A DNA stretch of 64,000 bases, from positions 26,164,001 to 26,228,000 of the forward strand of contig NC_135670.1 of NCBI RefSeq assembly GCF_964188315.1, written 5' to 3'. The position numbers and the translations under genes were made by a program. Shown here piece after piece: positions 32,394 through 51,310 of the stretch. The stretch comes from Podarcis muralis. Lineage: Eukaryota. Every line of letters begins with the position of its first letter. The stretch's first letter is position 1. The notes under the pieces were generated by a model. The model was not told the origin of the DNA and searched no databases. It was given only the letters and a program-made list of their open reading frames with translations.

Positions 32394-32731
32394 CAGTGGT
32401 ACCTCGCAAGACGGAAAACTCGCAAGACGAAATGGTTTTTTGTTTTTTGAGCTGCTTCGCAAGACGATTTTCCCTATGGGCTTGCTTCGCAAGACGGAAA
32501 CGTCTTGCAAGTTTGTTTCCTTTTTCTTAACACCGTTAATATAGTTGCAACTTGACTTCGAGGAGCAACTCATAGCACGCGGTGTGGTAGCCTTTTTTGA
32601 GGTTTTTGAAGACTTTGGTGATTTTTGATGCTTTTCCAAAACTTTCCCGACACCGTGCTTTGCAAGACGAAAAAATCGCAAGACAAAAAAACTCGCGGAA
32701 CGAATTAATTTCGTCTTGCGAGGCACCACTG
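32394..32731. mobile_element. Tigger-like MITE inserted into an LTR-like sequence
   Basis: TIR CAGTGGTACCTCGCAAGACG / CGTCTTGCGAGGCACCACTG with TA TSD; the right flank carries TATATAAG and AATAAA typical of an LTR. Confidence 0.85.
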
Positions 32732-33266
32732 TATTTCTGCTAGGGACCACCTCCTTCTATGATGTATGCATTGGGGGATGGTACTGAGCTACAGGGTGGC
32801 AATTTCAAAGTCTATATAAGGGGGCTTGCACACCTTTGTTCTGGGTCTCCTCCCTCCTACGTGTGGGGGAGCACCCTGTTGCAACAGCTTTAATAAAGAT
32901 CAGGCTTACTAGCTGCTTTGCTTCTCAATATTCTCTGGTTGGCTTCTGTTGGCCTCAATGGTTAAGTACTGAACCATCAACAATGCAAAAAAGGTTGCCC
33001 AGTTCCAAATATAACATGCAAAATTCTTTCCACAGCTAAATTTCAGAGTTCTCCCACTCTTAATTGTCTCGTTGTTGTTGTTGATAGATTTTTATTGATT
33101 TATCAGGTTTTGTTTTGTATGTATATACCTATGCATTATAGGAACATCATTCCTGACAGAGATTTTCCAGGAAATAACTTTTCATTTCAAACAGGATTCA
33201 TTAACCTCTAGGAAGACTCAAACCCACATAAGAAAAATGTTTAATAACTTCTCATTTGTGTCCAAA

Positions 33267-33397
33267 TTAACAAAAGTTTTGTCCCTTCATTTCTTCCACA
33301 GCCAAGTGAAGGCTAGGGGCCAGGGCTCGCTCCTCCCCAGGGGCTTCATTCAGGTGTTGCACAAGGTTCCAGTCCTCAAATTGCTCTTCCATTTTAA
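33267..33397 (-). CDS. KRBA1-repeat-like gene: candidate terminal exon (paralogue of the 44.7 kb exon)
   Basis: Acceptor CAG|TTAAAATGGAA; VKMEEQFEDWNLVQHLNEAPGEERALAPSLHLAVEEMKGQNFC*; minus-strand AATAAA at about 33091-33096. Confidence 0.45.
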
Positions 33398-33619
33398 CTG
33401 TTGCAAAGAAACAAGGGGGGGGGGAGGAACCAACGTCAAAGTGGAGCCAGCTCTCATCTTTTCTCTCCCCCCACCCACCTCCCACTCTGCCTGAGAATTT
33501 CCAGTACTCCAAGGCAAACCATATTCAGATCAATTCCTTTAGGAGGAACAGAATCCAAACATACATTCACACCCCTGGAGGCCCTTTGAGAAGAGACATA
33601 GCTCCAGTGGCAGAATATC

Positions 33620-34356
33620 TGCTTTGACAGAGTTAAGCTTGGTGGATCAGGGGGATGCTCTGGACGAAGTGTATCTTGATTTTAGTAAGGCTTTTGTCAA
33701 AGTCCCTCATAATGTTCTCATGAGGAAGCTGGTAAAATGTGAGCTGAATGAGGTAACTGTTAGGTGGATTTGTAGCTGGTTGACTGACCAAACCCATAGT
33801 ACTTATTAATGGTTCCTCGTCATCCTGGAAAAAAGTGACAAGTGGGGTGCTGCAGGGTTCTGTCCTGGGCAAGTTGTTGTTTAACGCCTTTATAAATTGG
33901 ACTTGGATGAAGGAATTGAGGGGATGCACACCAAACTGGGAGGGGTATCTAATGCCACAGAAGACAGAATCAGAATTCCAAATGACATTAACAGATTGGA
34001 GAACTGGGCACAAACTAACAGAGTTAATTTCAGTAGGGACAAATGTAAACTTCTTCACCTAGGCAGGAAGAACCAGATGCACAAATATAGGATGGGGGAC
34101 ACCTGGAGAAGGATCTAGGGGCCTTGGTGGACCACAAGCTTAACATGAATCAACTGTGTGATGCAGCAGCAGCAGCAGCAAAAAAGAAGAAGCTAATGTT
34201 ATTCTGGGCTGCATCAACAGTGGTCTAGTGCCCTGATGCAAGGAAGTCATAGTCCCTCTCTGTTCTGCCTTAGCCAGTCCACACCTGGAGTCATATGTCC
34301 AATTCTGGCACCACAATTTGAGAAGGATGTTGACAAGCTGGAAGGTGTACAGAGGA
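33620..34356 (+). mobile_element. CR1 reverse transcriptase fragment (degenerate)
   Basis: LDEVYLDFSKAFVKVPH, SGVLQGSVLG and TKLGG motifs with frameshifts; part of the 33310-34356 duplicated block. Confidence 0.85.
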
Positions 34357-35192
34357 TGCATGTTTTTTCCGGATAGGCAGAACCCTTGGAACCAAGCCTC
34401 TGCATACGATGTGATCATACTGTACTCCAGAACCGACCCCCCAATACCCCACTTAAGGGAACGGGGGCCCCTAAACCTGTGTACCAACTTCAGGCATGAC
34501 AAAGCTCTCCACCTGAGCATTTCAACTGTTTCTTACAAATTTAACTGGTGTTTTTTTAAAAACCATTACCAAGCTTAAAGTGTTGTCTTGCAGGGACAAA
34601 ATGCATGTACAGATGTGAAAATCTTGCATGCATTCACACAGCATTGAAACAGACTTGGAAAACCTTTTACATGACACATTAAGCTCGCATCCATACTTGG
34701 ATAATTTATCACAGTGGCTGCTGCCCGAACTTCACTGCGGTCTCTCCACTGGGGATGTCCCATGGCAAGAGCCCCCTGCTGAACCCCCTTCCCCTGTGGT
34801 GATCTAGTCTCCTGCCTTTAAGAGACAGGGACACTCTCCTGAGATCTGGGAGAGGCTCAGGGAATACGGACTGCTGGTTACTCAAAAACATGAATGCTGT
34901 GTCCAAACGCTTTCCCCCTCGCCCCGCTCCTTTCCCAGGGAGAAACCCACCTCTACATCAGCACTAAAATCAGAGTGGATGTCAACCCAGAGAAAACCCA
35001 GATTGCTGTTTGCTCCAGACTGAGTGCTAAAGAGCAGTTTCCCCTGGGGATAAAAAGAAGCACCAGTGTGGATAAACCCAGAGTTTAAACCACATTAGAG
35101 CTATGAGCCCATTGAACCTCGTCCCCTTTCACCAGGCACTGGATTTGGCAACAGGAAATATGTCCTTGACGTAAACAAACCCCACAGCTTAC

Positions 35193-35365
35193 ACACTGCA
35201 AAGATGTTCCTGTCCTCCGCCTCTGACCAGCTTCTTTTCCTTCCTCTTTCAGTCTGGAAGGTGGAAGAGCGACCTGAGGGAGCAATCGGAGGGCTGGATC
35301 CACCTCGTGCAGCAGCATTTTCAGGGCTATTGGCAGGCAGTTCCTCATCCTCTGCATCCAATTAA
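35193..35365 (-). CDS. KRBA1-repeat-like gene: exon with apparent 1-nt deletion
   Basis: Acceptor TTCTGTGCATAG|TTAATTGGAT, donor T|GTAAGC; 173 nt. Restoring one A gives VKLDAEDEELPANSPENAAARGG..RGRKRSWSEAEDRNIFAV with phase 1-1. Confidence 0.5.
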
Positions 35366-35689
35366 CTATGCACAGAAATAAGGAATCAGGGACCATCTCA
35401 GACTACCAGTACCGCCCCTAAAAAAAACCACCAAGGTGAAATTGGGTCCCTAACTCCCTGAGGGTTTGAGACCCATCAGCTACCCTCACCTGATTTAGCT
35501 GGCCAGTCGAAGCCGTTCTTGGGGTGAGGTATTGTTTATTTGCTAATGAGTCCAGTTTTCATTTTATTATTTGAGTATTGATAATGTTGTTTGCTCCTAT
35601 TTATATGGATAGTATGCTTTTTTCCACCCTATGGATGTTACGCTATACGATTTCCCCCATTCCTCCGCCTCCCCCCAATGGTATTATAG

Positions 35690-36135
35690 CTGCCGAGAGC
35701 ATATAACACCAGCCCTGAAAGACCTACATTGGCTCACAATACGTTTCCAAGCACAATTCAAAGTGCTGGTGCTGACCTTTTCAGGCCCTACACAGCCTCG
35801 GTCCAGTATACCTGAAAGGAGCGTCTCCACCCCCATTGTTCAGCCCGGTCACTGAGGTCTAGCTCCGAGGGGCCTTCTGGCGGTTTCCCTCACTGCGAGA
35901 AGTGACGTTACAAGGAACCAGGCAGAGGACCTTCTCGATACTGGTGCCCCGTCCGCCCTGTGGAAAGCCCTCCCATCACAATGTCAAGGAGATAAAGAAG
36001 TCTCTGACTTTTAGAAGACATCTGAAGGCAACCATGTTTAGGGAATTTTTTAATGTTTGATGTTTTATTATGTTTTTAATATTCTGTTGGTAGCCTTCCA
36101 GAGTGGCTGGGGAGGCCCGGCCAGATGGGTGGGGT
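35690..36135 (+). mobile_element. L2 3' fragment
   Basis: EHITPALKDLHWL..FKVLVLTF.. homology plus the L2 3' tail. Confidence 0.8.
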
Positions 36136-36591
36136 ATAAGTAAATGGTGGTGGTGGTTTGGTGGTGATTGTATATTTTTCTTTGCTGTAAGTTACTTGGC
36201 AAACAACTAATAAGATATATAGATATAGATTTTTAAAAAGAAGATTGTTCCAAAGAAAACTCCCTTAAAAGAATCAAGTCTTTTTGTCCTAAGAAAGTCT
36301 TTAAAATAATTCCTCTAATATTTTTTTTTTAATTGTTCACTAGCACCTTAAAGACCAACTAAGTTTGTTCTTGGTATAAGCTTTTTGTGTGTCTGCACAC
36401 TTCTTCTGATATAACAACAGCAGCAGCAACAAACAACAACGGAAATTTTTAGAGCTGGAAGGGACCCCCAAGAGCCATCTAGTCCAACCCCTGCAACGCA
36501 AGGAAGTCCAAGCAAGGTGCCAGGGTGGACCAGAAGGAACTGCTGGGTATCCTTAAACCAGAGCGTGTTTTTGCACTGTGTTCAGACCCAC

Positions 36592-36756
36592 CTTGGCCAT
36601 GGGGAGACCCACAGGTCCCTTTCCTCGTCTTCTGCTGCAGGGCTGACTGCCAGCTGCTGTTGCGGTTCCTGCGGAATATGTGAGGCGGGTGGCTGTTAAT
36701 CAGTTCCTTCAGGCGCTTCAGCACCCCTTTCAGGGGCTTCTTCTTTGCCACCATTT
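36592..36756 (-). CDS. KRBA1-repeat-like gene: internal exon
   Basis: Acceptor TTTTTCTTCTTCTTGTTCAG, donor G|GTGGGT; 165 nt, phase 1-1; EMVAKKKPLKGVLKRLKELINSHPPHIFRRNRNSSWQSALQQKTRKGTCGSPHGQ. Confidence 0.7.
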
Positions 36757-37036
36757 CTGAACAAGAAGAAGAAAAAGCCATGTCATTGTTTGGGGAAGCA
36801 GCACCAAGCCAGGCTGGGAAAGGAAGGTGAAGAAGACTCAGGGAATTTTCACTGCTATCCAGAGGAAACAGTGCAAAACAGTCAGCCTTCACGCGTCCCA
36901 AAAGGTCCCTGCCAGATGTTTTGGACTAGAACTCCCATTAGCCCCCCAAACAGCTGTCTTCAAATATCTGAAAGGCTGTCCCACCATGGAAGATGGAACA
37001 AGAGGGCAGGACCTGAACCAATGGATTCAAATGAGA

Positions 37037-37800
37037 AGGACAGATTGGGAGAGGCTATGGAAAACAGATTTGAAATTCATGGCATGTTGTTCACTAAAAG
37101 AAAACTACAGGAAAATGATCTACCAGAGGTATTTGGCTCCTGTTAAATTAGCAAAAATGTACAGAACAAGTACAAATACTTGCTGTAAATGTAAAGAAAA
37201 AGGTACCTTTTATCGTATGTGGTGGACATGTAAAGTAGTAAAGAAAAAATTGGGAGATGATGTATAATGAAATGAAAAAAAAAGGTTTCAAAAATAACTT
37301 TTTGTTTAAAAAAACCAGAAGCTTTCTCATTAGGAATTACAGGTACCAAAATTCCAAAAGATCAGAAAAGATTGTTTATGTATGCAACAACATCCACACA
37401 GATGCTACTGGCCCAGAGATGGAAGGAAGAGACAACACCGATCAGAGAAGAATGGCAAATCAGGATGATGGACCATGCCAAAATGGCAAAATTAACTGGG
37501 AAGCTCAGAAATCAAGAAGACAATAACTTTAAAAAAGAATGGGAAAAGTTTGTAATTTTATATACGAGACCACTGCAAAGCAGGTTAAAAACATTGGCAG
37601 GATTTTAAACACACTTGTAATGTAAAGGAAACTATGGACAATTCAGCAGGAAAAAATATTTTTGATAAAATATTGATATTGCAGTTGTAATTATTTTCAT
37701 TAGGACCTATGGAAGGGATGGGGGAAAGTCAGGAGATTCAGAGTAATCTCAGTATTTGGATTTTGAATTGTTGTTTGTTGTATGTTTATATTTAAAAAAT
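37037..37800 (+). mobile_element. L1-clade 3' fragment nested in a CR1 remnant
   Basis: CCSLKENYRKMIYQRYLAPVKLAKMY..CCKCKEKGTFYRMWWTC, ATTSTQMLLAQRWK; flanked by TCAAATGA on both sides. Confidence 0.8.
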
Positions 37801-37958
37801 CAAATGAAAACAGAGAAGGAAAGAGATTCTGACTCAATCACAGAAACGACTTTCTGATGGGAAGAGCTCTTCGATGGTGGAACAAGCATCACAGACCACA
37901 GCCAAGAGAACAGGTCCATTCCTTTGTCCCAAACCTCCTCCTTCCCAAGTTTACAAAC

Positions 37959-38021
37959 CTTGCTCTTCTTCCTTCCAGGAATCTAGCACAGGTTGGTGGC
38001 CAGGATCTGCAGCAGCTTCTG
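37959..38021 (-). CDS. KRBA1-repeat-like gene: short internal exon
   Basis: Acceptor TTTCTTTTGTTTCAG, donor G|GTTTGT; 63 nt, phase 1-1; EAAADPGHQPVLDSWKEEEQ. Confidence 0.55.
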
Positions 38022-38825
38022 CTGAAACAAAAGAAATCAAGGAATGCATTGCATCAGCGTTTGGGGCTGTCCCCTGCTGGAATTTTTAGGTGTAACTCTT
38101 TCCATTAGATGGGAAGAAGATAAAGGTCCCCTCCCAGAGAAGAAATGGCAGATCAAGTTGATGGACTATGCCGAAATGGCCAAATGACTGGAAGAACCAG
38201 AAGTCAGGAAGACCAAAATTTCAATAAGGGATGGGGAAAATGTATAACCTGTCTTAAAAACTATTGCAAACAGTTAGTAGGATTGGAATATTACTTGCAG
38301 TTTAAGGGTGAATTTTGGACACACAAAGGGGAGGAGGGAAGTCCAGGAGATTCCTTGGAATCTTGTTTCTATGTTATATGTTTGATATGTGACTGAAAAG
38401 TTTGAATCTGAAAAACCAAATAAATAAATCTGAGTGCAACTCAGGTTGCTGAGAGGAGTTTGCATGGAGTAACAGGGTTTGTCATTTTAGGAGGTGAAAC
38501 TTAACTGTTGTTCATTTCTTCGGTGAAGGGTCTTAAAAATATGTTTCTGGGATGTGAGGAATTCAAATCCGCTATTATTTTTGTGATGCTGGAAGCTGAA
38601 GAAATTCGACATGCCCTGATGGGTTAATGGAGTGGGGGAACCCCAGCTCCCCTGGACCATCTTCTCTATGCTGACATCTCTCTTGTCTCTTTGATGTTTA
38701 GAGGGAGAAACCTGAGGTTGCATCCAGCTTTACGGTTCCCTGCTCCTCTTCCCATTCTTAATCTGGACCTCCAGGGGGAGAGGTCCTCTTGGATCTACCT
38801 CCTGAGAGGAAAGGGGCAAGGCCGC

Positions 38826-39078
38826 CTTCTGTGGTGTAGTGGTTAAGAGTGGTGGACACGTAATCTGGTGAACTGGGTTCGATTCCCTGCTCCTCCACAT
38901 GCAGCTGCTGGGTGACCTTGGGCTAGTCACACTTCTCTGAAGTCTCTCAGCCCCACTTCCCTCACAGAGTGGTTGTTGTGGGGGAGGAAGGGAAAGGAGA
39001 ATGTTAGCCGCTTTGAGACTCTGTCGGGTAGTGATAAAGCGGGATATCAAATCCAAACTCTTCTTCTCTTCTCTCTCT
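38826..39078 (+). mobile_element. CORE-type SINE (Squam3/MIR-like)
   Basis: A box TGGTGTAGTGG, B box GGTTCGATTCC, CORE GGTGACCTTGGGCTAGTCAC and a CT-rich tail. Confidence 0.8.
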
Positions 39079-39603
39079 CCAACCAGACAGCCAGGACTAT
39101 AGAACTCTTTCCCTAACCTTTAATAAATGTAGAAACGTGAGGAGTTTGCTGGGTCTGGCCAATGGCCTTTCTAGCCCAGCATCCTCTTCTCACAGTGGCC
39201 AAAGAGATGTCTGTGGTAAACCCTGCAGCAGAACCCGAGCCCAAGAGCTCTCTCCCCTCCCGCGGTTTTGAGCAATTGGTAATTCAGAGGCGGCAGAGCA
39301 GAGCCGTCCTGGCCAGGAGCCCCCGGCAGCCCTCTCCTCCTCCATCAATTTGTCTAGCCCTCTTTCAAAGCCATCCAAGTCGCTGGCCATCGCTGCCTCC
39401 TGTGGCAGGGAGTTCCACAGTTCAACTTTGTGCTGTGGGGAGGATTTTGTTTTATCTCCCCTGAGTCTTCCAACCTTCAGATTCCTGCACACTAGTGGGA
39501 GAGGGGGAGAACTATCCCCTCTCTTCATGCCAGGCATCAGTTTATCGTTTTCTACCATGTCGCCTCTTTGAACTGGACTGTGGGGTTCCCTCTCTCCTTC
39601 TAC

Positions 39604-39654
39604 CTCCATGGGGGGATCCTTCAGGACCTCCTCTGCTTGGCTCCGCCTCTCCCG
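39604..39654 (-). CDS. KRBA1-repeat-like gene: possible short exon
   Basis: TCTTGCAG|CGGGAGAG..CATGGAG|GTAGAA; 51 nt, phase 1-1; GEAEPSRGGPEGSPHG. An alternative phase-1 donor at 39556 lies inside a CR1 remnant. The donor is weak. Confidence 0.3.
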
Positions 39655-39862
39655 CTGCAAGACGGTCCAGAGGGTCGGTGGGCGTGGCTTGAGGAGGAGG
39701 CTTGGCTTGGATACATTTTGGGTTTTTACCTTGTATTTTTATGTTATGAACCCCGCTGAGATCTATGGAGGATGAACAGCATACTAATGAATGAATTACT
39801 AGCAAGGTGGAGGTCCCTGGTCAAACCTACTGCCATAAAGGTCTACCCACAGCCTCACTTAC

Positions 39863-40159
39863 TTGTGGGATGTGATCCAACCATCCCTTGCCAGGATCCC
39901 CTGGGTACCCCGTCGCCCAGACCCTTGGCATCGCCAGGTGGGATGTTGGAGGGGAACAGCTGGCTCATGGCAATGTTGGCCAGGAATCTCTCCAGGATGG
40001 AGAGCGGGGAGGCTGACGAAGCTTGGCTGCCCATGGTGATAAGCTCTGGTTCTTGGGTGGAAGGAAGCCCCCTTTCCTCCTCTGGAGTGAGCAATGCGCT
40101 CCAAGGCCTGAACTCCGTCCCCTTCTGCCACAAAGTCCAATCCACCTTTGATCTCGTGT
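39863..40159 (-). CDS. KRBA1-repeat-like gene: internal exon
   Basis: Acceptor TTTTTGTTCTTCCTAG, donor A|GTAAGT; 297 nt, phase 1-1; contains SSASPLSILERFLANIAMSQLFP. Confidence 0.75.
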
Positions 40160-40384
40160 CTAGGAAGAACAAAAACACTCCAACTGAAGGTGCTGAGGGA
40201 TGGGACGCCTCTCCTATCCTCTCCGAGGCCTCAGCCCCCGGCTGTTTTGGAACTACAGTTCCCATCATTCCTGACCACTGGACATGCTAGCTAGCAATGA
40301 TGGGAGTTGCAGTCCAACAACAGCTGGGGACCCAAGGTTGAGAAAGACTACATAAGCTGGTAGCAATGGTTCTCCAGCATACTG

Positions 40385-40916
40385 CCTCGCCAGGGTGGCA
40401 CATGTTCTGGCTACCTCCCTCTTGGACTACCGCAATGCGCTCTACATGGGGCTACCTTTGAAGGTGACCCAGAGACTATGATCAATCCAGAATGTGGCAG
40501 CTAAACTGGTGCCTGGGAGTGGCCACCAAGACCACATAACACTGGTCCAGAAAGACCTACATTGGCTCCCAGTACGTTTCTGAGCACAATTCAAAGTGTT
40601 GGTGCTGACCTTTCAGGCCCTAAATTGCCTTGTCCCTGTATACCTGAAGGAGCGTCTCCACCCCCATTGTTCAGCCCGGACACTGAGGTCCAGATCCGAG
40701 GGCCTTCTGGTGGTTCCCTCCCTGCTAGAAGTGAGGTTACAGGGAACTAGGCAGAGGGCCTTCTCGGTAGTGGCACCCACCCTGTGGAACGTATTCCCAT
40801 CAGATATCAAGGAGATAAAGAAGTATCTGACTTTTAGAAGACATCTGAAGGCAGCCCTATTTAGGGAAGCTTTTAATGTTTGATGTTTTATCGTGTTTTT
40901 CATATTCTATTGGGAG
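40385..40916 (+). mobile_element. L2 3' fragment
   Basis: ORF 40596-40883: FKVLVLTFQALNCL..RAFSVVAPTLWNVFPSDIKEIKKYLTFRRHLKAALFREAFNV. Confidence 0.85.
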
Positions 40917-40935
40917 CCACATGGAGGTGGCAACC

Positions 40936-41078
40936 NNNNNNNNNNNNNNNNNNNNNNNNNNNNNNNNNNNNNNNNNNNNNNNNNNNNNNNNNNNNNNNNN
41001 NNNNNNNNNNNNNNNNNNNNNNNNNNNNNNNNNNNNNNNNNNNNNNNNNNNNNNNNNNNNNNNNNNNNNNNNNNNNNN
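40936..41078. other. Assembly gap (143 N)
   Basis: Run of N in the supplied sequence. Confidence 0.99.
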
Positions 41079-41140
41079 TTCCAAGAGATCTGGGTCAAAG
41101 TCAGATCTGATAGAATCTGCGCCCTGAAAACCTCTATTTA

Positions 41141-41398
41141 CCGTATTTTTCGCTCTATAAGACGCACCAGACCACAAGACGCACCTAGTTTTTGGAGGAG
41201 GTAAACAAGAAAAAAATATTCTGAATCTCAGAAGCCAGAACAGCAAGAGGGATCGCTGCGCAGTGAAAGCAGCAATCCCTCTTGCTGTTCTGGCTTCTGG
41301 GATAGCTGCGCAGCCTGCATTCGCTCCATAAGACGCACGCACATTTCCCCCTACTCTTTAGGAGGGAAAAAGTGAGTCTTATAGAGCAAAAAATACGG
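41141..41398. mobile_element. Tc1/mariner-pogo MITE
   Basis: TIR CCGTATTTTTCGCTCTATAAGAC / GTCTTATAGAGCAAAAAATACGG with TA TSD. Confidence 0.85.
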
Positions 41399-41622
41399 TA
41401 CTTTCCAAGAGAGAAAAAAGATAACCTCCTCAGCCCTTCACAGCTAAAGGGGTGATGTAGGTGCTCAGAGGCTTTCCAGGTACTGATGTCAGGTTAGTAA
41501 GCTCCGATTTAAATGTACACCTGCCCTACCAAGAAGGTGCAAGGCAGGTGACATCACCTGCCTCCACCACCATTGTCTGCCCTTCCCACTGCCTTGCTAG
41601 AGGTGCAACTCCAGAGGCTCAC

Positions 41623-41799
41623 CTTCCTGGGCTGAACTCAGGGCCTCCACCTCCTCCATGGTCCACGGGTGCTGCCTCTCCGGGGAGCTGCTGTTGGAGG
41701 AGATGGCAGTTGGCAACCACAGCTGGCTGGGGGGGTTCTGGGGCAGCTCCCTCAGGCACCGCTCCAGGCCTTGCAAGGGGGTGCTGTTCCAGCTGGGTC
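41623..41799 (-). CDS. KRBA1-repeat-like gene: internal exon with the best repeat match
   Basis: Acceptor CCCTTTCTCGGTAG, donor G|GTGAGC; 177 nt, phase 1-1; PSWNSTPLQGLERCLRELPQNPPSQLWLP..PWTMEEVEALSSAQE. Confidence 0.78.
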
Positions 41800-42654
41800 C
41801 TACCGAGAAAGGGCATGCAAAGCTGTCAGCTACACAACTGCACCATGCTGCTGTTCATTTATTATCCAGGTACCAACTTTCATTCCAAGAAGAAATACCA
41901 AAACAGTCAAGGAATCATGGAATCACGGAGTTGGAAGGGACTCATAGAGTCATCTAGACCAACCCCATGCAAGACAGAGATAGTATCTTAAGAATAAGAA
42001 TAAGAATAAGAATTTATTATTTGTACCCCGCCCATCTGGCTGGGTTTCCCCAGCCACTCTGGGCGGCTTCCATAGAAACCAAAAAACACTAAAATATCAT
42101 ATCATACATTAAAAACTTCCCTGGACAGGGCTGCCTTAAGATGTCTTCTGAATGTCAGGTAGTTGTTTATCGTTTTGACATCTGATGGGAGGGCAACAGC
42201 AAAACAACACTCAAACCGATTGCAGAAACACAGCTACTTGGAATTAAAATTTACAGTAAAACAACAGGTTTGAAACATGCATAATTAAAATATATAATGT
42301 ATACAGCGTAACAATTAAAATAGTTAGACTAGCCGTTCCCTAAAACATCAAACATTGAAAATTATTATTATTTCTGAAGGCAGCCCTGTATAGGGAAGTT
42401 TTTAATGTTTGATGTTCTATTATTGGGGGGGGTGTTATTGGGTTGCTGTTTTTATTGATTATATATGCTGTTTTTATTGTTGGGTTGTTGTTTTTATTCA
42501 TTATATATGCTGCTGGAGGAGGGCAGGGCGTGGCTTTATTTGACGGGGGTGGAGGGAGGGAGGAGGAGAAGGCAGGATCTACATCAGATTGCTGCCTGCA
42601 CAGCATTCTTTGATGGGGGTGGAGGGAGGGAGAGAAAACTTCAATGTGGGGGAT

Positions 42655-43205
42655 GTGACAAAAATATTTTCACACCGGGTACCACCTGACCTTGCTACGC
42701 CACTACCTAGAGGGGCACAGGCAGTGGGACATCCAGTCAGTGTAACTGCCTGTTCCACTGGTCTGGACCTTTTCCTCCTGCATGTGACCTGGGAGATGCG
42801 CCTGGCTCTGGCTGACTCCATAAAAGAGCCGAGTCATGCAGCCATTTTCTCGGTTGTTGTTTTTCTCTTGTCTTGCTTGCTGATCTTTTGCTGCCACGCT
42901 GCTCTCCTGCAGCCATTTTGTGATCTTAATGTGATTTTGCTATCTGCTGGCTCTCAGCCAGCAGCACCTGAGTTCTCACACGGTTTCTTTGTGTAACTAT
43001 CAAGCAAAGTCTGCTTTTCAGGGATCATATCGCAAACTGAAATGTGTCAACTTTTTGTTACTTTACTCAGAAAGACTCTTGTGTTGTTATTCTTTTAAGA
43101 GGGATCAAAAGGGAACACCAGAAATAAACTTAACTAAGAGATTAAAACGAACCTGCAAACTAGCTTCCAGCTATATTGAGGGGTATCTGCTCTGCTACAT
43201 CACTT
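42655..43205 (+). mobile_element. Putative LTR-like element
   Basis: Starts TGTGAC and carries ATAAAAGAGCC followed by a pyrimidine-rich tract; ends and TSD not resolved. Confidence 0.3.
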
Positions 43206-43369
43206 ACTAGTGTGAGGGAGGGAAATATCTTTTAGGTTGAGGTTCAAGCATAATTATTACTCTACTTTTTTAGCAGTCAGTCGTGTTTTCATTGTTCATC
43301 AACTGATTATTCACTATCTTCTCCATTTATGGGCTGTTTGTGTCCCCCCCCCCCCCCCAAGTTCTTTCC

Positions 43370-44430
43370 AGTATTTTATCCAAAAGATATTAGCATCCTT
43401 TACCGTTTCAAATCATTTTCTTTTTCCTTTGAAATAGAAATTCTCTCTGGAAATTCCCACCTAAAATCAATAGACTTAGCTTTTAATGCCTTCGCTAGAA
43501 ATTGAAATTTGTCTCTTTTCTTAAGCAGACAGGGTGGGATTTCCTTTTAAATTATAATCTCCTTTCCATTGATTTTTATTTCATTTCTCTACTTGTCATT
43601 AGTATCTTATCTTTAATCCAATTTGAAGTAAACCTTACAATACAATCTCCTGGCCATTTATTAGCTTTCACTTTCACGGAGTTGACTCTGAATATTTTTT
43701 CTGTGTGTCTGAGTACGTCCTCTTTCTGTAATCCTAACCAGGTGGTTAGATTCTCTATTATTTTCTTCTGTAAATTTTCCCAAGGTTCCTCGGGTATCCC
43801 TCAAAATCTCAGTATTTTCTCTCTACAGTGGTACCTCGGGTTAAGAACTTAATTCGTTCTGGAGGTCTGTTCTTAACCTGAAACTGTTCTTAACCTGAAG
43901 CACCACTTTAGCTAATGGGGCCTCCCGCTGCTGCCGTGCTGCTGCGCGATTTCTGTTCTCATCCTGAAGCAAAGTTCTTAACCCAAGGTAATATTTATGG
44001 GTTAGCGGAGTCTGTAACCTGAAGTGTATGTAACCTGAAGCGTATGTAACCCGAGGTACCACGGTACTTTGCATTTGTAGAATTGCAAGTGTATCCTAGG
44101 TAGCTTCTTGTTTGATTTTAAACTCATCTATTTCTTTTTAAAATTTATTATATTCTTTCCTTGGTTCTCTATTCTCTTTTGTTATTTTCTTCGCAACTTC
44201 CTCCTAACCTTGAGTCTTGTTTTTTATTTCTTGTATATTTTTTTAGTGTTCTTTGTTCTGTACTGTAAGCTCATTCACCTGCCCGACAAATGCTTCTGAG
44301 ACTTTTGAGTTTGCCTCCATTCTTCCTTCCATTCTAATTTCTCTTCTAGTCCTTTAACCCTTTCATTCATTTCTTTTTTCATTTCACCTAGATCTTTTTT
44401 CATTTCTCCTATATCTGTTTTCAAGGCCAG
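43370..44430 (-). mobile_element. Degenerate L1-clade ORF1 fragment
   Basis: Coiled-coil-like start, then approximately GIPEEPWENLQKKIIENL..IFRVNS..WPGDCIVRF..FRWEFPE with stops and frameshifts; interrupted by a MITE. Confidence 0.7.
43826..44064. mobile_element. Tigger-like MITE nested in L1 ORF1
   Basis: TIR CAGTGGTACCTCGGGTTA / TAACCCGAGGTACCACGG with TA TSD. Confidence 0.88.
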
Positions 44431-44602
44431 GATGAGCCCCCTGGGTGGAACACAGGACCTGGCTAAGTGTGGACAAGCATAGATCCCATCTGCCTTCTCC
44501 AGTCACTGCGACTGCCTCACTCCTCCCTTCAAATACCCTCCCACCCCATGTTTTCTGAACCAACCAGTCCATCCGCCCCACCCTGTCTGGACTCTGCCTC
44601 AC

Positions 44603-44761
44603 CCTCCAAATAGGGGACCCATATCCATAGGTCAATTCCTGTCTCTGGGCTGCTGTGAGCAAGGGTTCCATCGGGGAGGCTAGAGGCCAGGTCTCGCTCC
44701 TCAGGGTCTTCCTTCAGGTCTTGCACAAGGTTCCCATCCTCAAATTGCTCTTCCATTTTAA
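44603..44761 (-). CDS. KRBA1-repeat-like gene: internal exon
   Basis: Acceptor TTTTTTTGCAACAG|TTAAAATG, donor G|GTGAGG; 159 nt, phase 1-1; VKMEEQFEDGNLVQDLKEDPEERDLASSLPDGTLAHSSPETGIDLWIWVPYLE. Confidence 0.68.
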
Positions 44762-44964
44762 CTGTTGCAAAAAAACAAGGGAGGGGGGAACCAGGGTCAA
44801 AGTGGAGCCAATCCTAATCTTTTCTCTCCCCCCATCACCCACCCTGCCTGAGAATTTCTGGTAATCCAAGGCAAACCATATTCAGATCAATTCCTTTGGA
44901 AAGAACAGAATCCAAACATACATTCACACCCCTGAAGTCCCTTTGAGAAGGGCCATAGCTCAGT

Positions 44965-46031
44965 GGCAGAATATCTGCTTTGACAAAGTTAAGCTTGGTG
45001 GATCGGGGATGCTCTGGACATAGTGCATCTTGAATTCAGTCAGGCTTTTGACAAATTCCCTCATGATATTCTCATGAGGAAGCTGGTAAAATGTGGGCTG
45101 AACGAGGTAACTGTTAGGTGGATTTGTAGCTGGTTGACTGACCAAACCCAGAGTACTCATTAATGGTTCGTCATCCTGGAAAAAAAGCGACAAGTGGGTG
45201 CCGCAGGGTTCTGTCCTGGGCAAGTTGTTGTTTAACGTTTTCTTAAATGACTTGGATGAAGGAATTGAGGGGATGCTCATCAAATTTGCAGATGACACCA
45301 AACTGGGAGGGGTATCTAACGCCACAGAAGACAGAATCAGAATTCAAAATGACATTAACAGATTGGAGAACTGGGCCCAAACTAACAGAGTTAATTTCAG
45401 TAGGGACAAATGTAAAGTTCTTCACCTAGGCAGGAAGAACCCGATGCACAAATATAAGATGGGGGACACCTGGAGAAGGATCAAGGAGCCTTGGTGGACT
45501 ACAAGCTTAACACGAGTCAACAGTGTGATGCAGCAGCAGCAGGGGGGGGAAAAGAGGGAAAGAAAAAAAAACTAATATTATTCTAGGCTGTATCAACAGA
45601 AGTCTAGTGTCCTGATCCAAGGAAGTAATAGTCCCTCTCTTTTCTGCCTTGGCCAGACCGCACCTGGAGTCATATGTCCAGTTCTGGGCACCACAGTTTG
45701 AGAAGGATGTTGACAAGCTGCAAGGTGTGCAGAGGAGGGCAATCAAGATGATCAAAGGTCTGGAAACCAAGCCTTAGGAGGAAGGGTTGAGGAAGTTGGG
45801 GATGTTTAGCCTAGAGAAGACTGAGATGTGATAAAATAGCCATCTTCAAATAACTGAAAGACTGTTGCATGGAATATGGAGCAAGCTTGTTTTCCGCTGC
45901 TCCAGAGGGGGGTCACCCCAACCAATGAATTCAAATGACAAGGAAGGGGATTCTGAAAGAGACACCAGGAAGAACTTTATGATAGTGAGAACTGTCTGAC
46001 AGTGGAAGGGGCTCCTTCAGAAAGTGGTGAA
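44965..46031 (+). mobile_element. CR1 RT/3' fragment
   Basis: PQGSVLGKLLFNVFLNDLDEGIEGMLIKFADDTKLGG motif (ORF 45198-45575) and downstream CR1 sequence. Confidence 0.9.
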
Positions 46032-46557
46032 GGTTTTGAAAACAGGTTTACGAACTTAATCCGTTCCTGAAGTCCATTCTTAAACTGAATCCATTCTTAA
46101 ACTGAGGCACATTTTCCCTAATGAGGCCTCCTGCCGGCGGTGCCCTTCCACCGTTTGGATTCCGTTTGTAGACTGAGGTAAAGTTCACAAACCAGAACAC
46201 TACTTCCGGTTTTGTGGAGTTTGTAAACCGAATAGTTTGTAAACAGGGCTGTACGTAAACCGAGATACCGCCATAGAAGCATTCTAATTCACAATTACCT
46301 CACTGTTTGCAATCCTTCTACCCAGATTCAACTTTTCTGAGACCCTTTGCTTTTATGGAAAAGTGACATTTCCCTTTCTTACAACTCCGACCATGTCACC
46401 TCTTTGAATTGGGTTTTGCATGGCTACTACTCCTGTGTAATCATGGAGTTTTTTGGCCTGGGGCTTACTCCAAGTCCCCTCCCTAGTTGCCGCCCCTCAT
46501 TCCTAGGTCCCAGTTTGGGATACAACATTAAAACGCAGTATTAAAACAACCTACAAG

Positions 46558-46723
46558 CGTTTCTGTGCGCTGCTCTGGTTCGCCAGAAGTGGCTTAGTCA
46601 TGCCAGCCACATGACCCGGAAACTGTTTGCCGGCTCCCTCGGCCAATAAAGTGAGACAAGCGCCGCAACCCCAGAGTCGGTCACAACTGGACTTAATGGT
46701 CAGGGGTCCCTTTACCTTTACCT
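46558..46723 (+). mobile_element. Sauria-type SINE, 5'-truncated
   Basis: 3' half plus the TTTACCTTTACCTT tail. Confidence 0.85.
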
Positions 46724-47149
46724 TACAAGCATAAAAAACGAGCCGGGTCCTAAAAACAGACACCTCAGACGTCAGAAGCCGGGTTCTAGAGGTGCGTCTT
46801 CCGTATCCTCTGGAAGCTGTGTAAGGAAGGTGCCAGGAGTACCTCTTTGGGGAGGGAGTTCCACTGTTTAGGGGCCGCCACAGAGAAGGCCCTGCCCTGG
46901 GGGGTGCCCCACTGCGATCCTCTGAGGGAGGAGAAATTACCGAGAGGCAGCACCCAAGAGGGTCTGTAAGGAAGGAAGGTTCTGGAGGGTAATGGCTGCG
47001 TCAGTTTGTTGCTGGGAATGAAGCATTCCTGAGCATTCCATTCTCACACAGTTCCATAACTGCCACCTTGGAGACAGCATCATTTAAATGGTTCCACAGC
47101 AACTGGCAAAAGCAAAGGAGGCCAGAACTTTTTGCCACATGAATCAAAT

Positions 47150-48067
47150 TTATCTCTTTTTTAATTTGTTTATTGGGTTTTACAGTTTTATATCAACATA
47201 GTCATAAACAAGAAAAAACAACAAGAATGCATAAATCCCATTCTTCCCCCCATCCCCCACCCAGCGACTTCCCTCAACTTCCCCTTCTGGTTCTTTAAGT
47301 ATTTACTGCTTCTGCTTACATTATTTTACCTTAATTTCAAAATCTTTTAACTAAATGCTCTTATTTTCTTATCATTTTTATACCATATCATTCAGATTAC
47401 ATTTTGCACTTAATTGCTTTCCAGATCATTGTTCCTTATCTATTATACTTATTTGCTTAGTTGTAAGTGTTTACTCAAACCCTGCAAGAAGGTCTATTTC
47501 TTTACAATATTTCTGCAAGTACAACATAAACAGATCCCAGTCTTTTTAAAAGTCTCTGTTGTCTTTGTCTCTTAGTCTTCCTGTAAGTTTCGCCATTTCT
47601 GCATATTCCATCATTTTAACTTGCCAGTCTTCTTTCGTTGGTATCTTATCGTCATTCAATTTTTGAGCTAGTCGGACCCCATCTGCCATTGTAACATACA
47701 TAAATAAGTTATTCAACTCTTTTGGCAATTATTGTCCTATAATACCTAGTAGAAAAGGTTCTGTTTTTTTAGCAAAAGTTATTTTAAACATTTTTTTCAT
47801 CTGATTATAGATAATTTCCCAATAGTTTTTGATTGCTTTGCAATTCTACCACATGTGGTAAAAGGTTCCTTCTTTCTCTTTACACTTCCAACATATATTA
47901 GAGCTTGTTGTATACATCTTAGCAAATTTAACAGGAGTCATATACCATTGATACATCATTTTAATATAATTCTCTTTCAAAGTTATACAATCCTTAAATT
48001 TTAGGTCCACCTTTCATAACTTTCCCCAATTTTTCATTTGTATATTATGTCCTAAATCTTGTGCCCA
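47150..48067 (-). mobile_element. 5'-truncated L1-clade LINE
   Basis: ORF2 C-terminal homology (..WQVKMMEYAEMAKLTGRLR); 14-bp TSD CACATGAATCAAAT at 47136-47149 and 48068-48081. Confidence 0.85.
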
Positions 48068-48161
48068 CACATGAATCAAATCTCGATGCAAAGTTGGGGT
48101 TGGGCTGGATGACCCTTAGGGGTCCCTTCCAAGGCGGCTCTGAATTTTCTTTTTCAAATGA

Positions 48162-49059
48162 TGGCCAGACCACACCTGAAGTCATATGTCCAGTTCTGGG
48201 CACCACAGTTTGAGAAGGATGTTGACAAGCTGCAAGGTGTGCAGAGGAGGGCAATCAAGATGATCAAGGGTCTGGAAACCAAGCCTTAGGTGGAAGGGTT
48301 GAGGAAGTTGGGGATGTTTAGCCTAGAGAAGACTGAGATGTGATAAAATAGCATCTTCAAATATCTGAAAAACTGTTGCATGGAAGATGGAGCAAACTTG
48401 CTTTCTGCTGTTCCAGAGGGGGTCACTCCAAACAATGAATTCAAATGACAAGGAAGGGGATTCTGAAAGAGACACCAGGAAGAACTTTGTGATAGCGAGA
48501 ACTGTCTGGCAGTGGAAGGGGCTACCTCAGAAAGTGGTGGACTCTCCAGGATATAAAGGATATAAAGACAATATGGCATTAGTGACATAGTTGAAAGGAA
48601 TATGTAAAAAAATGTTTTATAAGAATAAGGGTGAAAAAGCTAGAACATTATGCCAAATTTAAACAAAATGATATAAAGGGAAAAATTGGAGACATAATAG
48701 TTGAAATGTATAACATAGAATAAGATTTGAAAGAGGGTAGGGCACTGCTGAATACGATTGTGTAAAAGGGAACACAGAAAAGGGAGATGTGAGGAAGTCA
48801 GGAAGGAGGGTTATGAAAACAATAAGTAAGAAACTGGATTTTTATGTCTTTTTTATGTCTTTTTCTTCTACTTTTTATGTTTTGTATTGCATCTTTCTGT
48901 TTTTATTTGATTGTGATAATGTTCCTTCTTTCTTTCTTTTTTGGTTTTGATTGTGAAGTTTGTTTTACTGTTCAAAATTTCAATAAATATCTTTTACTTA
49001 TTTAAAAAAAACAGAAAGTGGTGGACTCTCCTTCTGTGGAGGTTTTGAAAGCAGAGGTT

Positions 49060-49065
<6 letters not shown>
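48162..49065 (+). mobile_element. CR1 fragment (near-duplicate of 45655-46031) split by an L1 3' end
   Basis: Insert 48548-49011 ends in AATAAA plus an A tail and is flanked by the 20-bp TSD CAGAAAGTGGTGGACTCTCC at 48528-48547 and 49012-49031. Confidence 0.82.
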
Positions 49066-49108
<43 letters not shown>

Positions 49109-49420
49109 TTATACCCTGCCCATTTCCCCAGCCACTCTGGGCGGCTCCCAATCAAGTGTTAAAAACAATACAGCATTAAATATCAAAAACTTCCCTTAAC
49201 AGGGCTGCCTTCAGATGTATTTTAAAGATAAGTTAGCTACTTATTTCCTTCACATCTGAAGGGAGGGTGTTCCACAGGGCGGGCGCCACTACCGAGAAGG
49301 CCCTCTGTCTGGTTCCCTGTAACCTCACTTCTCACAATGAGGGAACTGCCAGAAGGCCCTGGTGCTGGATCTCAGTGTCCGGGCTGAACAATGGGGGTGG
49401 AGACACTCCTTCAGGTATAC
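49066..49420 (-). mobile_element. L2 3' fragment with (ATT)n tail
   Basis: (ATA)n at 49066-49108 followed by the reverse-complement L2 tail. Confidence 0.8.
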
Positions 49421-49600
49421 ATGTATACGCTCCTTCAGGTATATATCATGTGTCATGGATGGTCAAGTTGAGATTCCTGCATTGCAGGGGGTTGGACCAG
49501 ATGACCCTCAGAGTCCCTTTCCAACTCTGCAGGTCTATCGTTCTATAATTAGGCATAAGGCTGCTTCCTACTGGAGAAATACTCTTCCTCTAAGCTATTT

Positions 49601-49958
49601 AAAGGTAAAGGTACCCCTGCCCGTACGGGCCAGTCTTGACAGACTCTAGGGTTGTGCGCCCATCTCACTCAAGAGGCCGGGGGCCAGCGCTGTCCGGAGA
49701 CACTTCCGGGTCACGTGGCCAGAGTGACATCGCTGCTCTGGCGAGCCAGAGCCGCACACGGAAACGCCATTTACCTTCCCAATAGTAAGCGGTCCCTATT
49801 TATCTACTTGCACCCGGGGGTGCTTTCGAACTGCTAGGTTGGCAGGCTCTGGGACCGAGCAACGGGAGCGCACCCCGCTGCGGGGATTCGAACCGCCGAC
49901 CTTTCGATCGGCAAGCCCTAGGCGCTGAGGCTTTTACCCACAGCGCCACCCGCGTCCC
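49601..49958 (-). mobile_element. Sauria-type SINE, full length
   Basis: Complete head and tail; flanks TCTAAGCTATTT / TCTGAGCTATTT form a TSD with one mismatch. Confidence 0.9.
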
Positions 49959-50100
49959 TCTGAGCTATTTACCCTCTTCTTAATTTCATCGGACACACCA
50001 AATCTGTTGTCAATAGTTGGCCAATCTCCATTCAAATCTCCTGAATGCCTCCAAATGCCTCAAACTGTCAGGAGCAACTAGGTAAAGACAACCCCCTCAC

Positions 50101-50269
50101 CTTTGACCCTCCCCACCTCACCCCCCCCTTGCAAAGCCAGCCAGAGGAGTTTTACTTTTGATGCCCTCGGCTGCCCCCTCCTTGCCTGGGGCTCCACATG
50201 GACTGAGAGGATGACCAGGTCTGTTCCGGTACTGAAGTGAGGAGCTGCTGCTCATTGCTTCCACTTTAA
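50101..50269 (-). CDS. KRBA1-repeat-like gene: most 5' exon found, apparent +1 in a G8 run
   Basis: Acceptor CTGCAG|TTAAAGTGGAA, donor AAAG|GTGAGG; 169 nt; VKVEAMSSSSSLQYRNRPGHPLSPCGAPGKEGAAEGIKSKTPLAGFARG. As sequenced it reaches TGA; seven G instead of eight gives an open phase 1-1 exon. Confidence 0.5.
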
Positions 50270-50539
50270 CTGCAGGTACCCCCCCCCCCAAAGGAAAACG
50301 CAAAGGCTAAGCCAGAAGCTGGAAACACATTGGGAGCAGAAACAGCCCGAGGTATCAGCAAATCCACACGACTGGCAATGGCTCTAACGTGGACGTGGCA
50401 AAAACAGAGTAATAAATGGCGCAAGTGGGAATTTGTTGCCATTTAAAGGTACTGTACAATCGCATATTGCACGCATCTAACTCTTGCAATTTCAGCCTTG
50501 AAAGCTGTCTGGTTGAAATTGCACTTTAAAAATAAAATA

Positions 50540-51310
50540 ATATGCTTTTCAGGTTTATACATTTCACTAATTTTACAATCATTTTAATATTTCAAAACTC
50601 AACTTCCTTCCCCCTCTTTCTGCAGTTCTTTAAATTCATTTTTAATATCTTCTGCATACCCAAATTAACTTAATTTGCTCATTTATTTGTCTTCTTTAAA
50701 TACATACTCTTATAAAACTACAGGTTATTACAATAACCCTACCAAAGTTTTTATCTGTTTATAATTTATCTGTAAATATTCAATAAACCATTTCCATTCT
50801 TTTATTTAAAAATTTGTTATCTCAATTTCTTATTCGCCCGGTGAGTTTCGCCATTTCTGCATATTCTGTAAGTTTTTGTATCCATTTTTCCTTTGCCGGG
50901 ACTTCTGCTTCTTTCCATTTTGGGGCAAGTAACATTCTTGCTGCTGTAGTTGCATACATGAATAAGTTTCTATATATTTTAGGTAGTTCTGTCCCTATAA
51001 TTCCCTCTAACACGTGCGATTTCAACACCAAAGCATTCAGATAATTTCTCCATAGAAACTGCCATTCTGGTGGTTCCCTCACTGCAAGAAGTGAGGTTAC
51101 AGGGAACCAGGCAGAGGGCCTTTTCTGTACTGGCGCCCACCGTGTGGAACGCCCTCCCATCACAATGTCAAGGAGATAAAGAAGTATCTGACTTTTAGAA
51201 GACATCTGAAGGCAGCCCTGTTTAGGGAAGTTTTTAATGTTTGATGTTTTATCATGTTTTTAATATTCTGTTGGTAGCTGCCCAGACTGGCTGGGGAGGT
51301 CCGGCCAGAT
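50540..51310. mobile_element. L1 3' fragment (-) joined to an L2 3' fragment (+)
   Basis: FMYATTAARMLLAPKWK..EYAEMAKLTGRIRN on - at 50540-51035; L2 tail on + at 51060-51310. Confidence 0.75.

What the first reader, a model, noticed from the sequence alone, without database searches (positions are those of the whole stretch)
33267..50269. Hidden multi-exon KRBA1-repeat-like gene between HNF1A and C12orf43
Minus-strand exons at 44761-44603, 41799-41623, 40159-39863, 38021-37959 and 36756-36592 all have canonical AG/GT sites, lengths divisible by three (159, 177, 297, 63, 165 nt), phase 1 at both ends and open frames. Further candidates lie at 50269-50101, 39654-39604, 35365-35193 and 33397-33267. 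No single long ORF reveals the gene. HNF1A and C12orf43 are adjacent in human, so this appears to be a lineage-specific resident. All-phase-1 cassette exons allow free skipping and duplication, giving a modular protein of roughly 450 aa or more with no zinc fingers seen.
Basis: partly seen in the sequence, partly recalled or inferred. Interest (0 to 1): 0.85.

Follow-up and report, generated by a model that had tools for sequence, protein, structure and literature searches.

The report
Rearranged partial KRBA1 copy in lacertids
The exons are real and already annotated (wall lizard LOC114587065): a lacertid-only, reshuffled partial copy of KRBA1 next to HNF1A that keeps an open frame, evolves almost neutrally and showed no spliced RNA here.

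Summary
The five core exons and the last exon match, base for base, NCBI's model of Podarcis muralis LOC114587065 ("uncharacterized protein", 327-386 aa). Orthologues lie between CUSTOS (C12orf43) and HNF1A in P. lilfordi and Zootoca; P. raffonei also has an annotated orthologue, whose locus I could not fetch. So the gene is not hidden, but its origin is unrecorded.

DNA homology that includes introns shows a mosaic copy of internal exons of KRBA1, which sits on another chromosome. In window order the parent exons are 11, 12, an 18/25 chimera, 22, the tail of 7, 8 with an in-frame 135-nt deletion, 9, 10, and the 5' part of 12 again. The all-phase-1 layout is inherited: parent exons 3-27 are all phase 1-1. 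The copy arose in the lacertid lineage shortly before the Podarcis/Zootoca split.

It lacks the KRAB box and the parent's last exon. It is below Pfam's KRBA1 cut-off.

- dN/dS is 0.70-0.77, not different from 1 (parent 0.45).
- Exons diverge faster than introns.
- The predicted start codon differs between genera.
- Exon 6 carries a 1-nt deletion in this assembly.
- Stops and frameshifts are fewer than expected.
- Four RNA runs gave no splice junction.

The assembly gap lies inside intron 2 and touches no exon. Functional status is unresolved; I lean slightly towards a slowly decaying relic.

The parts
33310..51024 (-). Whole KRBA1-derived block: three rearranged pieces homologous, introns included, to the KRBA1 locus on another chromosome
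   Evidence: blastn of the window against L005 (P. muralis KRBA1): 24 single-copy blocks, 82-96% identity
50156..50269 (-). E0: relic of KRBA1 exon 11. Open, phase 1-1, with a 15-nt in-frame deletion. In no annotated model.
   Evidence: Alignment to parent exon 11; tblastn hit to Hemicordylus KRBA1 residues 583-629; mostly missing in Zootoca
44603..44761 (-). E1: homologue of KRBA1 exon 12. Carries the predicted ATG at 44756-44754, which is an internal Met of the parent exon. Keeps the upstream AG acceptor
   Evidence: Exact match to P0005 exon 1; 65% identity to P. muralis KRBA1 536-585
44677..45736 (-). Upstream copy of an internal 1.08-kb duplication, paired with 33310-34356. It contains an intronic LINE reverse-transcriptase fragment that was co-copied from KRBA1 intron 11
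   Evidence: 87.5% identity over 1079 bp; both copies align to parent 39753-41308; there is no such copy upstream of E2 in Zootoca
41623..41799 (-). E2: in-frame chimeric exon. The 5' ~150 nt plus the upstream intron come from KRBA1 exon 18; the 3' ~35 nt plus the downstream intron come from exon 25. It is the only repeat Pfam recognises
   Evidence: Three-way alignment; blastn blocks 41923-41646 to parent 47656-47938 and 41656-41481 to parent 62364-62539; Pfam KRBA1 at 22.3 bits against a cut-off of 27
40936..41078 (.). Assembly gap, inside intron 2, next to a SINE-like repeat (40526-40918)
   Evidence: see the observation check
39863..40159 (-). E3: homologue of KRBA1 exon 22. The motif Cys is replaced by Phe in all orthologues
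   Evidence: 71% identity to P. muralis KRBA1 1057-1154 and 47% to Hemicordylus
39604..39696 (-). X: remnant of the 3' end of KRBA1 exon 7, with the breakpoint inside the exon. Unused in all models
   Evidence: blastn 39696-39618 to parent 31004-31082; not found in P. lilfordi
37959..38021 (-). E4: KRBA1 exon 8 with an internal in-frame 135-nt deletion (198 to 63 nt), original splice sites kept. An alternative NAGNAG acceptor lies 3 nt upstream
   Evidence: Alignment; isoforms P0005 and P0018 differ there; no hit in Zootoca
36592..36756 (-). E5: 3' 165 nt of the KRBA1 exon 9 homologue. The ancestral acceptor 60 nt upstream (36816) is also intact and open. The motif Cys is replaced by Arg
35193..35365 (-). 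E6: homologue of KRBA1 exon 10. Has a 1-nt deletion here (173 instead of 174 nt), so including it would shift the frame. The RefSeq isoforms on this assembly skip it
   Evidence: The older P. muralis model P0007 and P. lilfordi P0017 include it. Zootoca has a 26-nt indel and uses an earlier donor
33267..33397 (-). E7: 5' 88 nt of a second KRBA1 exon 12 copy fused to unrelated sequence. Stop TAA at 33269-33267; ATTAAA at 33245

Best explanation
SHOWN. This is a lacertid-specific, DNA-level partial duplicate of KRBA1, introns included. The parent gene lies on another chromosome. The copy sits between CUSTOS (upstream, same strand) and HNF1A (convergent).

The copy is a mosaic of parent exons, in window order: 11, 12, an 18/25 chimera, 22, the tail of 7, 8 with a 135-nt deletion, 9, 10, and the 5' part of 12. 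It has no KRAB exon and no C-terminal exon. It arose just before the Podarcis/Zootoca split. Podarcis later gained the upstream exon 12 copy (E1) through an internal duplication of about 1 kb.

INFERRED. It looks like a tidy gene because every internal KRBA1 exon is phase 1-1. Any surviving subset of exons therefore splices in frame, and a gene predictor can simply leave out the damaged ones (E0, X, and E6 in this assembly).

My reading of its status is a slowly decaying or at most very weakly constrained relic. If it is translated at all, the product would be a disordered 327-386 aa chain with three degenerate KRBA1-type helical motifs. It would not have KRBA1's KRAB-dependent function.

The origin is near certain. 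The 'relic rather than working gene' part is only slightly better than even.
For: Origin:
- Exon-for-exon identity with RefSeq LOC114587065.
- The same position between CUSTOS and HNF1A in P. muralis and P. lilfordi; in Zootoca CUSTOS lies upstream, and HNF1A is not among the genes called in the fetched stretch.
- Homology to the KRBA1 locus across exons and introns.
- KRBA1 is on a different chromosome record.
- In the tree, the copies form one clade (100/100) inside lacertid KRBA1 (100/100).
- Intron divergence between copy and parent is 10.6%, against 9.6% between the Podarcis and Zootoca orthologues.
- All-phase-1 layout in the parent.

Relaxed constraint:
- dN/dS is 0.70-0.77, not different from 1 (p 0.13-0.32). 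The parent gives 0.45 on the same exons (p 0.003) and 0.34 over the whole gene.
- dN is 2.6 times the parent's (p 4e-6).
- Exon divergence exceeds intron divergence: 7.9 against 6.9%, 12.6 against 9.6%, and 14.1 against 10.6%.
- The conserved motif Cys is lost in two of three repeats.
- Pfam scores of 14.6-21.8 bits fall below the cut-off of 27.
- Start codon and exon content differ between genera.
- E6 has a 1-nt deletion here and a 26-nt indel in Zootoca.
- There are 11 amino-acid differences between the two P. muralis models P0007 and P0005.
- No splice joint and near-zero exon depth in four RNA runs; only low-depth unspliced contigs.
- No indexed RNA run holds more than 48% of the words of exon 3.
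- No CpG island in 33-51 kb.
- AlphaFold mean pLDDT is 35.
Against: - The frame is kept better than neutral drift predicts. There are no stops in seven exons in four species, where 2.2-3.1 are expected per species pair (P(no stop) 0.03-0.10).
- No frameshifting indels occur in E0-E5. In complex sequence 2.8 and 3.7 are expected (P 0.06 and 0.025). With all intron indels counted, 7.3 and 7.7 are expected, against 0 and 2 observed, both of those in E6.
- The two structural deletions, the E2 chimera and E4, are both in frame.
- Splice sites are conserved.
- RefSeq lists several transcript variants for one protein, three accessions for P0005. From my knowledge of NCBI's pipeline this usually reflects RNA evidence that I could not see.
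- My RNA sample was small: three contig sets and 12% of one raw run, tissues unknown.
Confidence: 0.55

Rival explanations
1. It is a working young gene. A KRAB-less protein made only of KRBA1 repeats, expressed in a tissue or stage I did not sample (for example germ line or embryo). It would be intrinsically disordered, so selection acts on frame, length and a few helical motifs rather than on most residues. It could act by competing with KRBA1 for whatever its repeats bind.
For: - Deficit of stops and frameshifts.
- In-frame chimeric exon and in-frame deletion.
- Conserved splice sites and the same seven-exon model predicted independently in P. muralis and P. lilfordi, and a six-exon isoform (327 aa, without E6) in P. 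raffonei.
- Invariant blocks around the three motifs and the 'HPPHIFRRN' stretch across Podarcis and Zootoca.
- Several RefSeq transcript variants.
- The parent itself evolves fast, at dN/dS 0.34-0.45.
Against: - dN/dS is not distinguishable from 1, and dN is above the intron rate.
- There is no conserved start codon. E1 and E4 were not found at the corresponding positions in Zootoca, and E8 is missing from Podarcis.
- E6 is broken in this assembly.
- No spliced RNA was seen.
- There is no promoter-like CpG island.
- The function of KRBA1 repeats is unknown, so the proposed mechanism is speculation.
Confidence: 0.35
2. The exons are not an independent gene. They would be occasional downstream exons of read-through transcripts from CUSTOS, which lies upstream on the same strand, or part of a non-coding transcript. 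E0 and E1 both keep acceptors and no promoter is visible.
For: - CUSTOS lies upstream in the same orientation, with its last exon about 2.8 kb from the start of the KRBA1-derived block.
- E1 begins with an acceptor rather than a transcription start.
- The only CpG-rich region nearby is the CUSTOS promoter at 59-60 kb.
- Low-depth unspliced RNA contigs cover parts of the region.
Against: No read or contig links CUSTOS to these exons; I could not lay reads on that interval. Annotations in three species keep the two genes apart.
Confidence: 0.07
3. It is an assembly or annotation artefact: KRBA1 pieces wrongly placed here, or exons picked by chance.
For: An assembly gap and many repeats lie in the region.
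Against: - The same arrangement appears at the same locus in independent assemblies of P. muralis, P. lilfordi and Zootoca.
- The copy differs from the parent by 10-14%.
- DNA runs hold 100% of the words of exon 3.
Confidence: 0.03

Closest known systems
KRBA1 (KRAB-A domain containing 1), Pfam PF15287 repeats plus a PF01352 KRAB box; here P. muralis KRBA1 (P0078, 1753 aa, 28 coding exons)
   Same: - Direct descent: exon and intron homology.
- The same phase 1-1 exon design with one repeat per exon.
- The same 'PLxGLxxCLKE'-type motif in E2.
- Recognisable but altered motifs in E3 and E5.
   Different: - Only 7-9 of 28 exons are present, in a permuted order.
- There is one chimeric exon and one internally deleted exon.
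- No KRAB box and no C-terminal exon.
- It lies on a different chromosome.
- Nonsynonymous rate 2.6 times the parent's (about 4-5 times by branch length in the protein tree).
- It scores below Pfam's gathering cut-off.
RefSeq LOC114587065 (P. muralis), LOC128404001 (P. raffonei), LOC118076276 (Zootoca vivipara), and the P. lilfordi 'hypothetical predicted protein'
   Same: This is that gene. The window's exons reproduce P0005 and P0018 exactly.
   Different: Those records call it uncharacterized. Among the source names the tools returned for these records and in the full-text library searched, I found no mention of its KRBA1 origin, mosaic structure, age or relaxed constraint.
Partial or chimeric segmental gene duplicates (unprocessed pseudogenes and young genes born by exon shuffling of symmetric exons)
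   Same: - A DNA-level copy with introns.
- Truncated at both ends and rearranged by deletions.
- Symmetric exons keep the frame.
   Different: Its status lies between the two outcomes: the frame is preserved but amino-acid change is near neutral.

Membership tests
KRBA1 family (Pfam PF15287 / PF01352 architecture) | KRBA1 repeat detected at Pfam's gathering score (27 bits) | tested here: not met
   Window protein P0005 scores 19.0 bits; P0007 21.8, P0017 18.4, P0019 14.6; one stretch only, in E2. The Zootoca orthologue passes (33.4) through an extra exon. The parent scores 161 bits with 9 stretches
KRBA1 family (Pfam PF15287 / PF01352 architecture) | N-terminal KRAB box | tested here: not met
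   No KRAB hit in any orthologue, whereas the parent scores 64.9 bits. No single-copy window block matches parent DNA upstream of 31004, so the KRAB exon 2 region is not represented
KRBA1 family (Pfam PF15287 / PF01352 architecture) | Descent from the KRBA1 locus (homology of exons and flanking introns) | tested here: met
   24 collinear or rearranged blocks, 7855 aligned nt; tree support 100/100
KRBA1 family (Pfam PF15287 / PF01352 architecture) | Internal exons all phase 1-1, one repeat per exon | tested here: met
   Parent exons 3-27 in Hemicordylus, P. muralis and Zootoca; window exons likewise
Protein-coding gene under purifying selection | dN/dS significantly below 1 | tested here: not met
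   0.70-0.77, Fisher p 0.13-0.32
Protein-coding gene under purifying selection | Reading frame kept beyond the neutral expectation | tested here: inconclusive
   P(no stop) is 0.03-0.10 per species pair. Frameshift deficit has P 0.06 and 0.025 in the conservative test, and 7e-4 and 0.017 in the raw test. E6 is an exception
Protein-coding gene under purifying selection | Spliced transcripts | tested here: not met
   No canonical joint at any of the exon borders in X1, X2, X5 and X22; contigs cross the borders unspliced. This is a small sample, so absence is weak evidence
Protein-coding gene under purifying selection | Conserved start codon and exon set among orthologues | tested here: not met
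   The Podarcis ATG is in E1; the Zootoca ATG is inside E2. E4 was not found in Zootoca, its only E1-like exon lies after E6, and E8 is only in Zootoca
Processed pseudogene / retrocopy | Intronless copy of the mRNA | tested here: not met
   Parent introns were copied with the exons

The most novel reading that the evidence does not exclude
A gene caught at birth. A mosaic of KRBA1 cassette exons was assembled by duplication and in-frame deletions, including a fused 18/25 exon, and gained a start codon in Podarcis by internal duplication of exon 12. It would encode a working KRAB-less KRBA1-repeat protein specific to lacertid lizards, possibly modulating KRBA1.
Probability: 0.35. Interest if true: 0.5.

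Novelty: new member of a known kind. Interest (0 to 1): 0.3.

Why it matters
It gives an uncharacterized RefSeq locus an origin, an age and a structure.

It is also a clean worked example of how a parent gene built entirely of phase-1 symmetric exons yields partial copies that stay "gene-like" for a long time. Annotation pipelines keep calling such copies protein-coding whether or not they function.

If expression and constraint were shown, it would be a datable case of gene birth by exon shuffling in lizards. If not, it is a caution for annotation.

It has no bearing on HNF1A or CUSTOS function that I could detect.

Tried and rejected
1. E1 and E7 as antisense pieces of a LINE, hence spurious exons. 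I suspected this, because a LINE reverse-transcriptase ORF lies beside both. Rejected: the LINE fragment sits in KRBA1 intron 11 and was copied along with exon 12, and the exon itself is 65% identical to KRBA1 exon 12.

2. Protein-atlas search with exon 2: no usable hit, best score 0.51.

3. A regular-expression scan for more KRBA1 motifs: my pattern was too strict and found nothing relevant.

4. RNA runs chosen by word share turned out to hold repeats, not exons. These were a tRNA-derived SINE at about 38830-39070 and SINE-like copies at 40.4-41.4 kb and 42.0-42.2 kb.

5. Rfam on 32-52 kb: nothing at gathering score.

6. Literature: 67 papers mention KRBA1, and none mentions the LOC. The one I read shows only that a mouse Krba1 exon, weakly activated by Tra2-beta in minigene assays, is among that splicing factor's targets (PMC3240583).

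7. Fetching the loci of P0019, P0021, P0003, P0025 and P0028 failed because only the longest isoform is on record.

8. Earlier scan notes by the word 'KRBA1': none.

9. AlphaFold gave no confident fold, so I made no fold search.


Full report
**What is there.** The window is from Podarcis muralis. HNF1A exon 1 is at 6846-7187 on the plus strand, and the last CUSTOS (C12orf43) exon is at about 53796-54227 on the minus strand.

A search of 1.84 billion representative proteins with the 98-aa translation of the 297-nt exon gave four hits:
- a 100% match in a 385-aa protein;
- a 70% match in a 249-aa protein;
- a 48% match in a 1770-aa protein;
- one hit to a repetitive 408-aa protein that I judged spurious.

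The first three are P. muralis LOC114587065, Zootoca vivipara LOC118076276 (both named "uncharacterized protein") and Hemicordylus capensis KRBA1.

I mapped the current RefSeq isoform P0005 (328 aa) onto its locus L002, which has the same spacing as the window. The older model P0007 (386 aa) also uses 35365-35193.

Orthologues are annotated in P. lilfordi (388 aa) and P. raffonei (327 aa). In P. muralis and P. lilfordi the gene lies between CUSTOS and HNF1A. In Zootoca, CUSTOS lies upstream on the same strand. The gene is therefore real as a predicted unit, and it is not hidden.

**The assembly gap.** The run of N at 40936-41078 is inside the intron between E2 (donor at 41623) and E3 (acceptor at 40159), more than 500 nt from either. 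Its two flanks align, in the same order and orientation, to one continuous stretch of P. lilfordi. The intron has a similar length in three species. Frame continuity between E2 and E3 depends only on splice phase, not on the gap. I did not look up or fill the missing letters.

**Origin.** Full-length KRBA1 proteins exist in lacertids on a different chromosome record: P. muralis P0078 on OZ076965.1, whereas the window's locus is on OZ076970.1.

KRBA1 has 28 coding exons in Hemicordylus and P. muralis and 26 in Zootoca. All internal exons from exon 3 onward are phase 1-1. The "all phase 1" pattern is therefore inherited.

blastn of the window against the P. muralis KRBA1 locus finds homology through exons and introns. 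The pieces are:

| Window | Parent KRBA1 | Content |
|---|---|---|
| 51024-44435 | 38115-41550 | exons 11 and 12 = E0, E1 |
| 42471-41646 | 45001-47938 | exon 18 = 5' part of E2 |
| 41656-41079 | 62364-62726 | end of exon 25 and its intron = 3' part of E2 |
| 40188-39702 | 57219-57713 | exon 22 = E3 |
| 39696-33310 | 31004-41308 | tail of exon 7 = X; exon 8 = E4; exon 9 = E5; exon 10 = E6; 5' part of exon 12 = E7; exon 11 deleted |

- E2 is an in-frame fusion of exons 18 and 25.
- E4 is exon 8 with a 135-nt in-frame deletion.
- E0, read with its ancestral donor, is an open 114-nt exon (50269-50156).
- X is a truncated exon 7 with a novel AG.
- The 1.08-kb repeat 33310-34356 / 44677-45736 (87.5% identity) is a second copy of intron 11 plus exon 12. 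Zootoca has only the downstream copy, followed by a homologue of parent exon 13 (exon 14 in Hemicordylus) that Podarcis lacks.

**Age.** In a tree of the homologous exons, the four copies form one clade (100/100). That clade sits with lacertid KRBA1 (100/100), far from Rhineura and other squamates. Intron mismatch divergence between copy and parent is 10.6%, against 9.6% between the Podarcis and Zootoca copies. The duplication therefore shortly preceded that split.

**Is it a working gene?** Evidence against:
- dN/dS among P. muralis, P. lilfordi and Zootoca is 0.70-0.77, not different from 1. The parent gives 0.45 on the same exons and 0.34 overall. The copy's dN is 2.6 times the parent's.
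- Exons diverge faster than introns in every comparison.
- The conserved Cys of the repeat motif is lost in E3 and E5.
- Only E2 is seen by Pfam, and the Podarcis proteins score below the gathering cut-off. There is no KRAB box.
- Predicted start codons differ: E1 in Podarcis, inside E2 in Zootoca. Exon content also differs.
- E6 has lost one A here, compared with P. lilfordi, Zootoca and the parent. It has a 26-nt indel in Zootoca.
- Two P. muralis models differ at 11 residues.
- There is no CpG island.
- AlphaFold finds no fold (pLDDT 35). It places low-confidence helices at the three motifs, among others.
- In three RNA contig sets and one raw RNA run there is no splice joint at any exon border. 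Exon depth is about zero, and the few contigs cross borders unspliced.
- No indexed RNA run holds more than 48% of the words of exon 3, while DNA runs hold 100%.

Evidence for:
- There are no stops, where 2.2-3.1 are expected per species pair.
- There are no frameshifting indels outside E6, where 2.8-3.7 are expected by the conservative count and 7.3-7.7 by the raw count.
- Both structural deletions are in frame.
- Splice sites are conserved.
- There are several RefSeq transcript variants.

**Verdict.** Calling it "hidden" is wrong.

The unit is a lacertid-specific mosaic partial duplicate of KRBA1. I give about 0.55 to a near-neutral, slowly decaying relic that stays spliceable because of its symmetric exons. 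I give about 0.35 to a young, weakly constrained working gene. The rest goes to read-through or non-coding use, or to an artefact.

Interest is modest. It is a tidy example of a known process and a caution for annotation.

Noticed in passing
window 28927-29199 and 58219-58494 (plus strand ORFs): Two nearly identical 90-91-aa ORFs lie 29 kb apart. An earlier scan note reads the 28.8-29.5 kb piece as an orphan duplicate of CUSTOS exon 1 and its promoter. It lies between the 3' ends of HNF1A and the KRBA1 copy, so this interval has been rearranged more than once.
   Followed up: partly
window 38830-39070: A SINE whose 5' part looks tRNA-derived to me (no tRNA scan was run), in intron 3. It has very high depth in all RNA contig sets and strand-biased raw reads (first mate on minus 134-249, on plus 34-40). 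This reflects family-wide SINE expression, not expression of this locus.
   Followed up: partly
window 40526-40918, 35693-36213, 49125-49420, 51065-51400, 42017-42194, 20650-20962, 9214-9485: A repeat family with at least seven copies in the window and further copies in the KRBA1 locus. One copy abuts the assembly gap, and these repeats gave the misleading word share in the first run search.
   Followed up: partly
window 45198-45575 (plus strand) and 33633-34058: A LINE reverse-transcriptase fragment that was already present in KRBA1 intron 11 and was carried along twice with exon 12.
   Followed up: yes
L005 1-218 and L006 1-593: In both P. muralis and Zootoca, a KRAB zinc-finger gene of 709-710 aa lies head to head, less than 3 kb upstream of KRBA1.
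   Followed up: no
L005 exon 22 (57224-57544) against L006 exon 20: In the P. muralis model, parent exon 22 uses an acceptor 24 nt upstream of the one used in Zootoca and in the copy. The extra eight codons are also open in the window, upstream of 40159.
   Followed up: no
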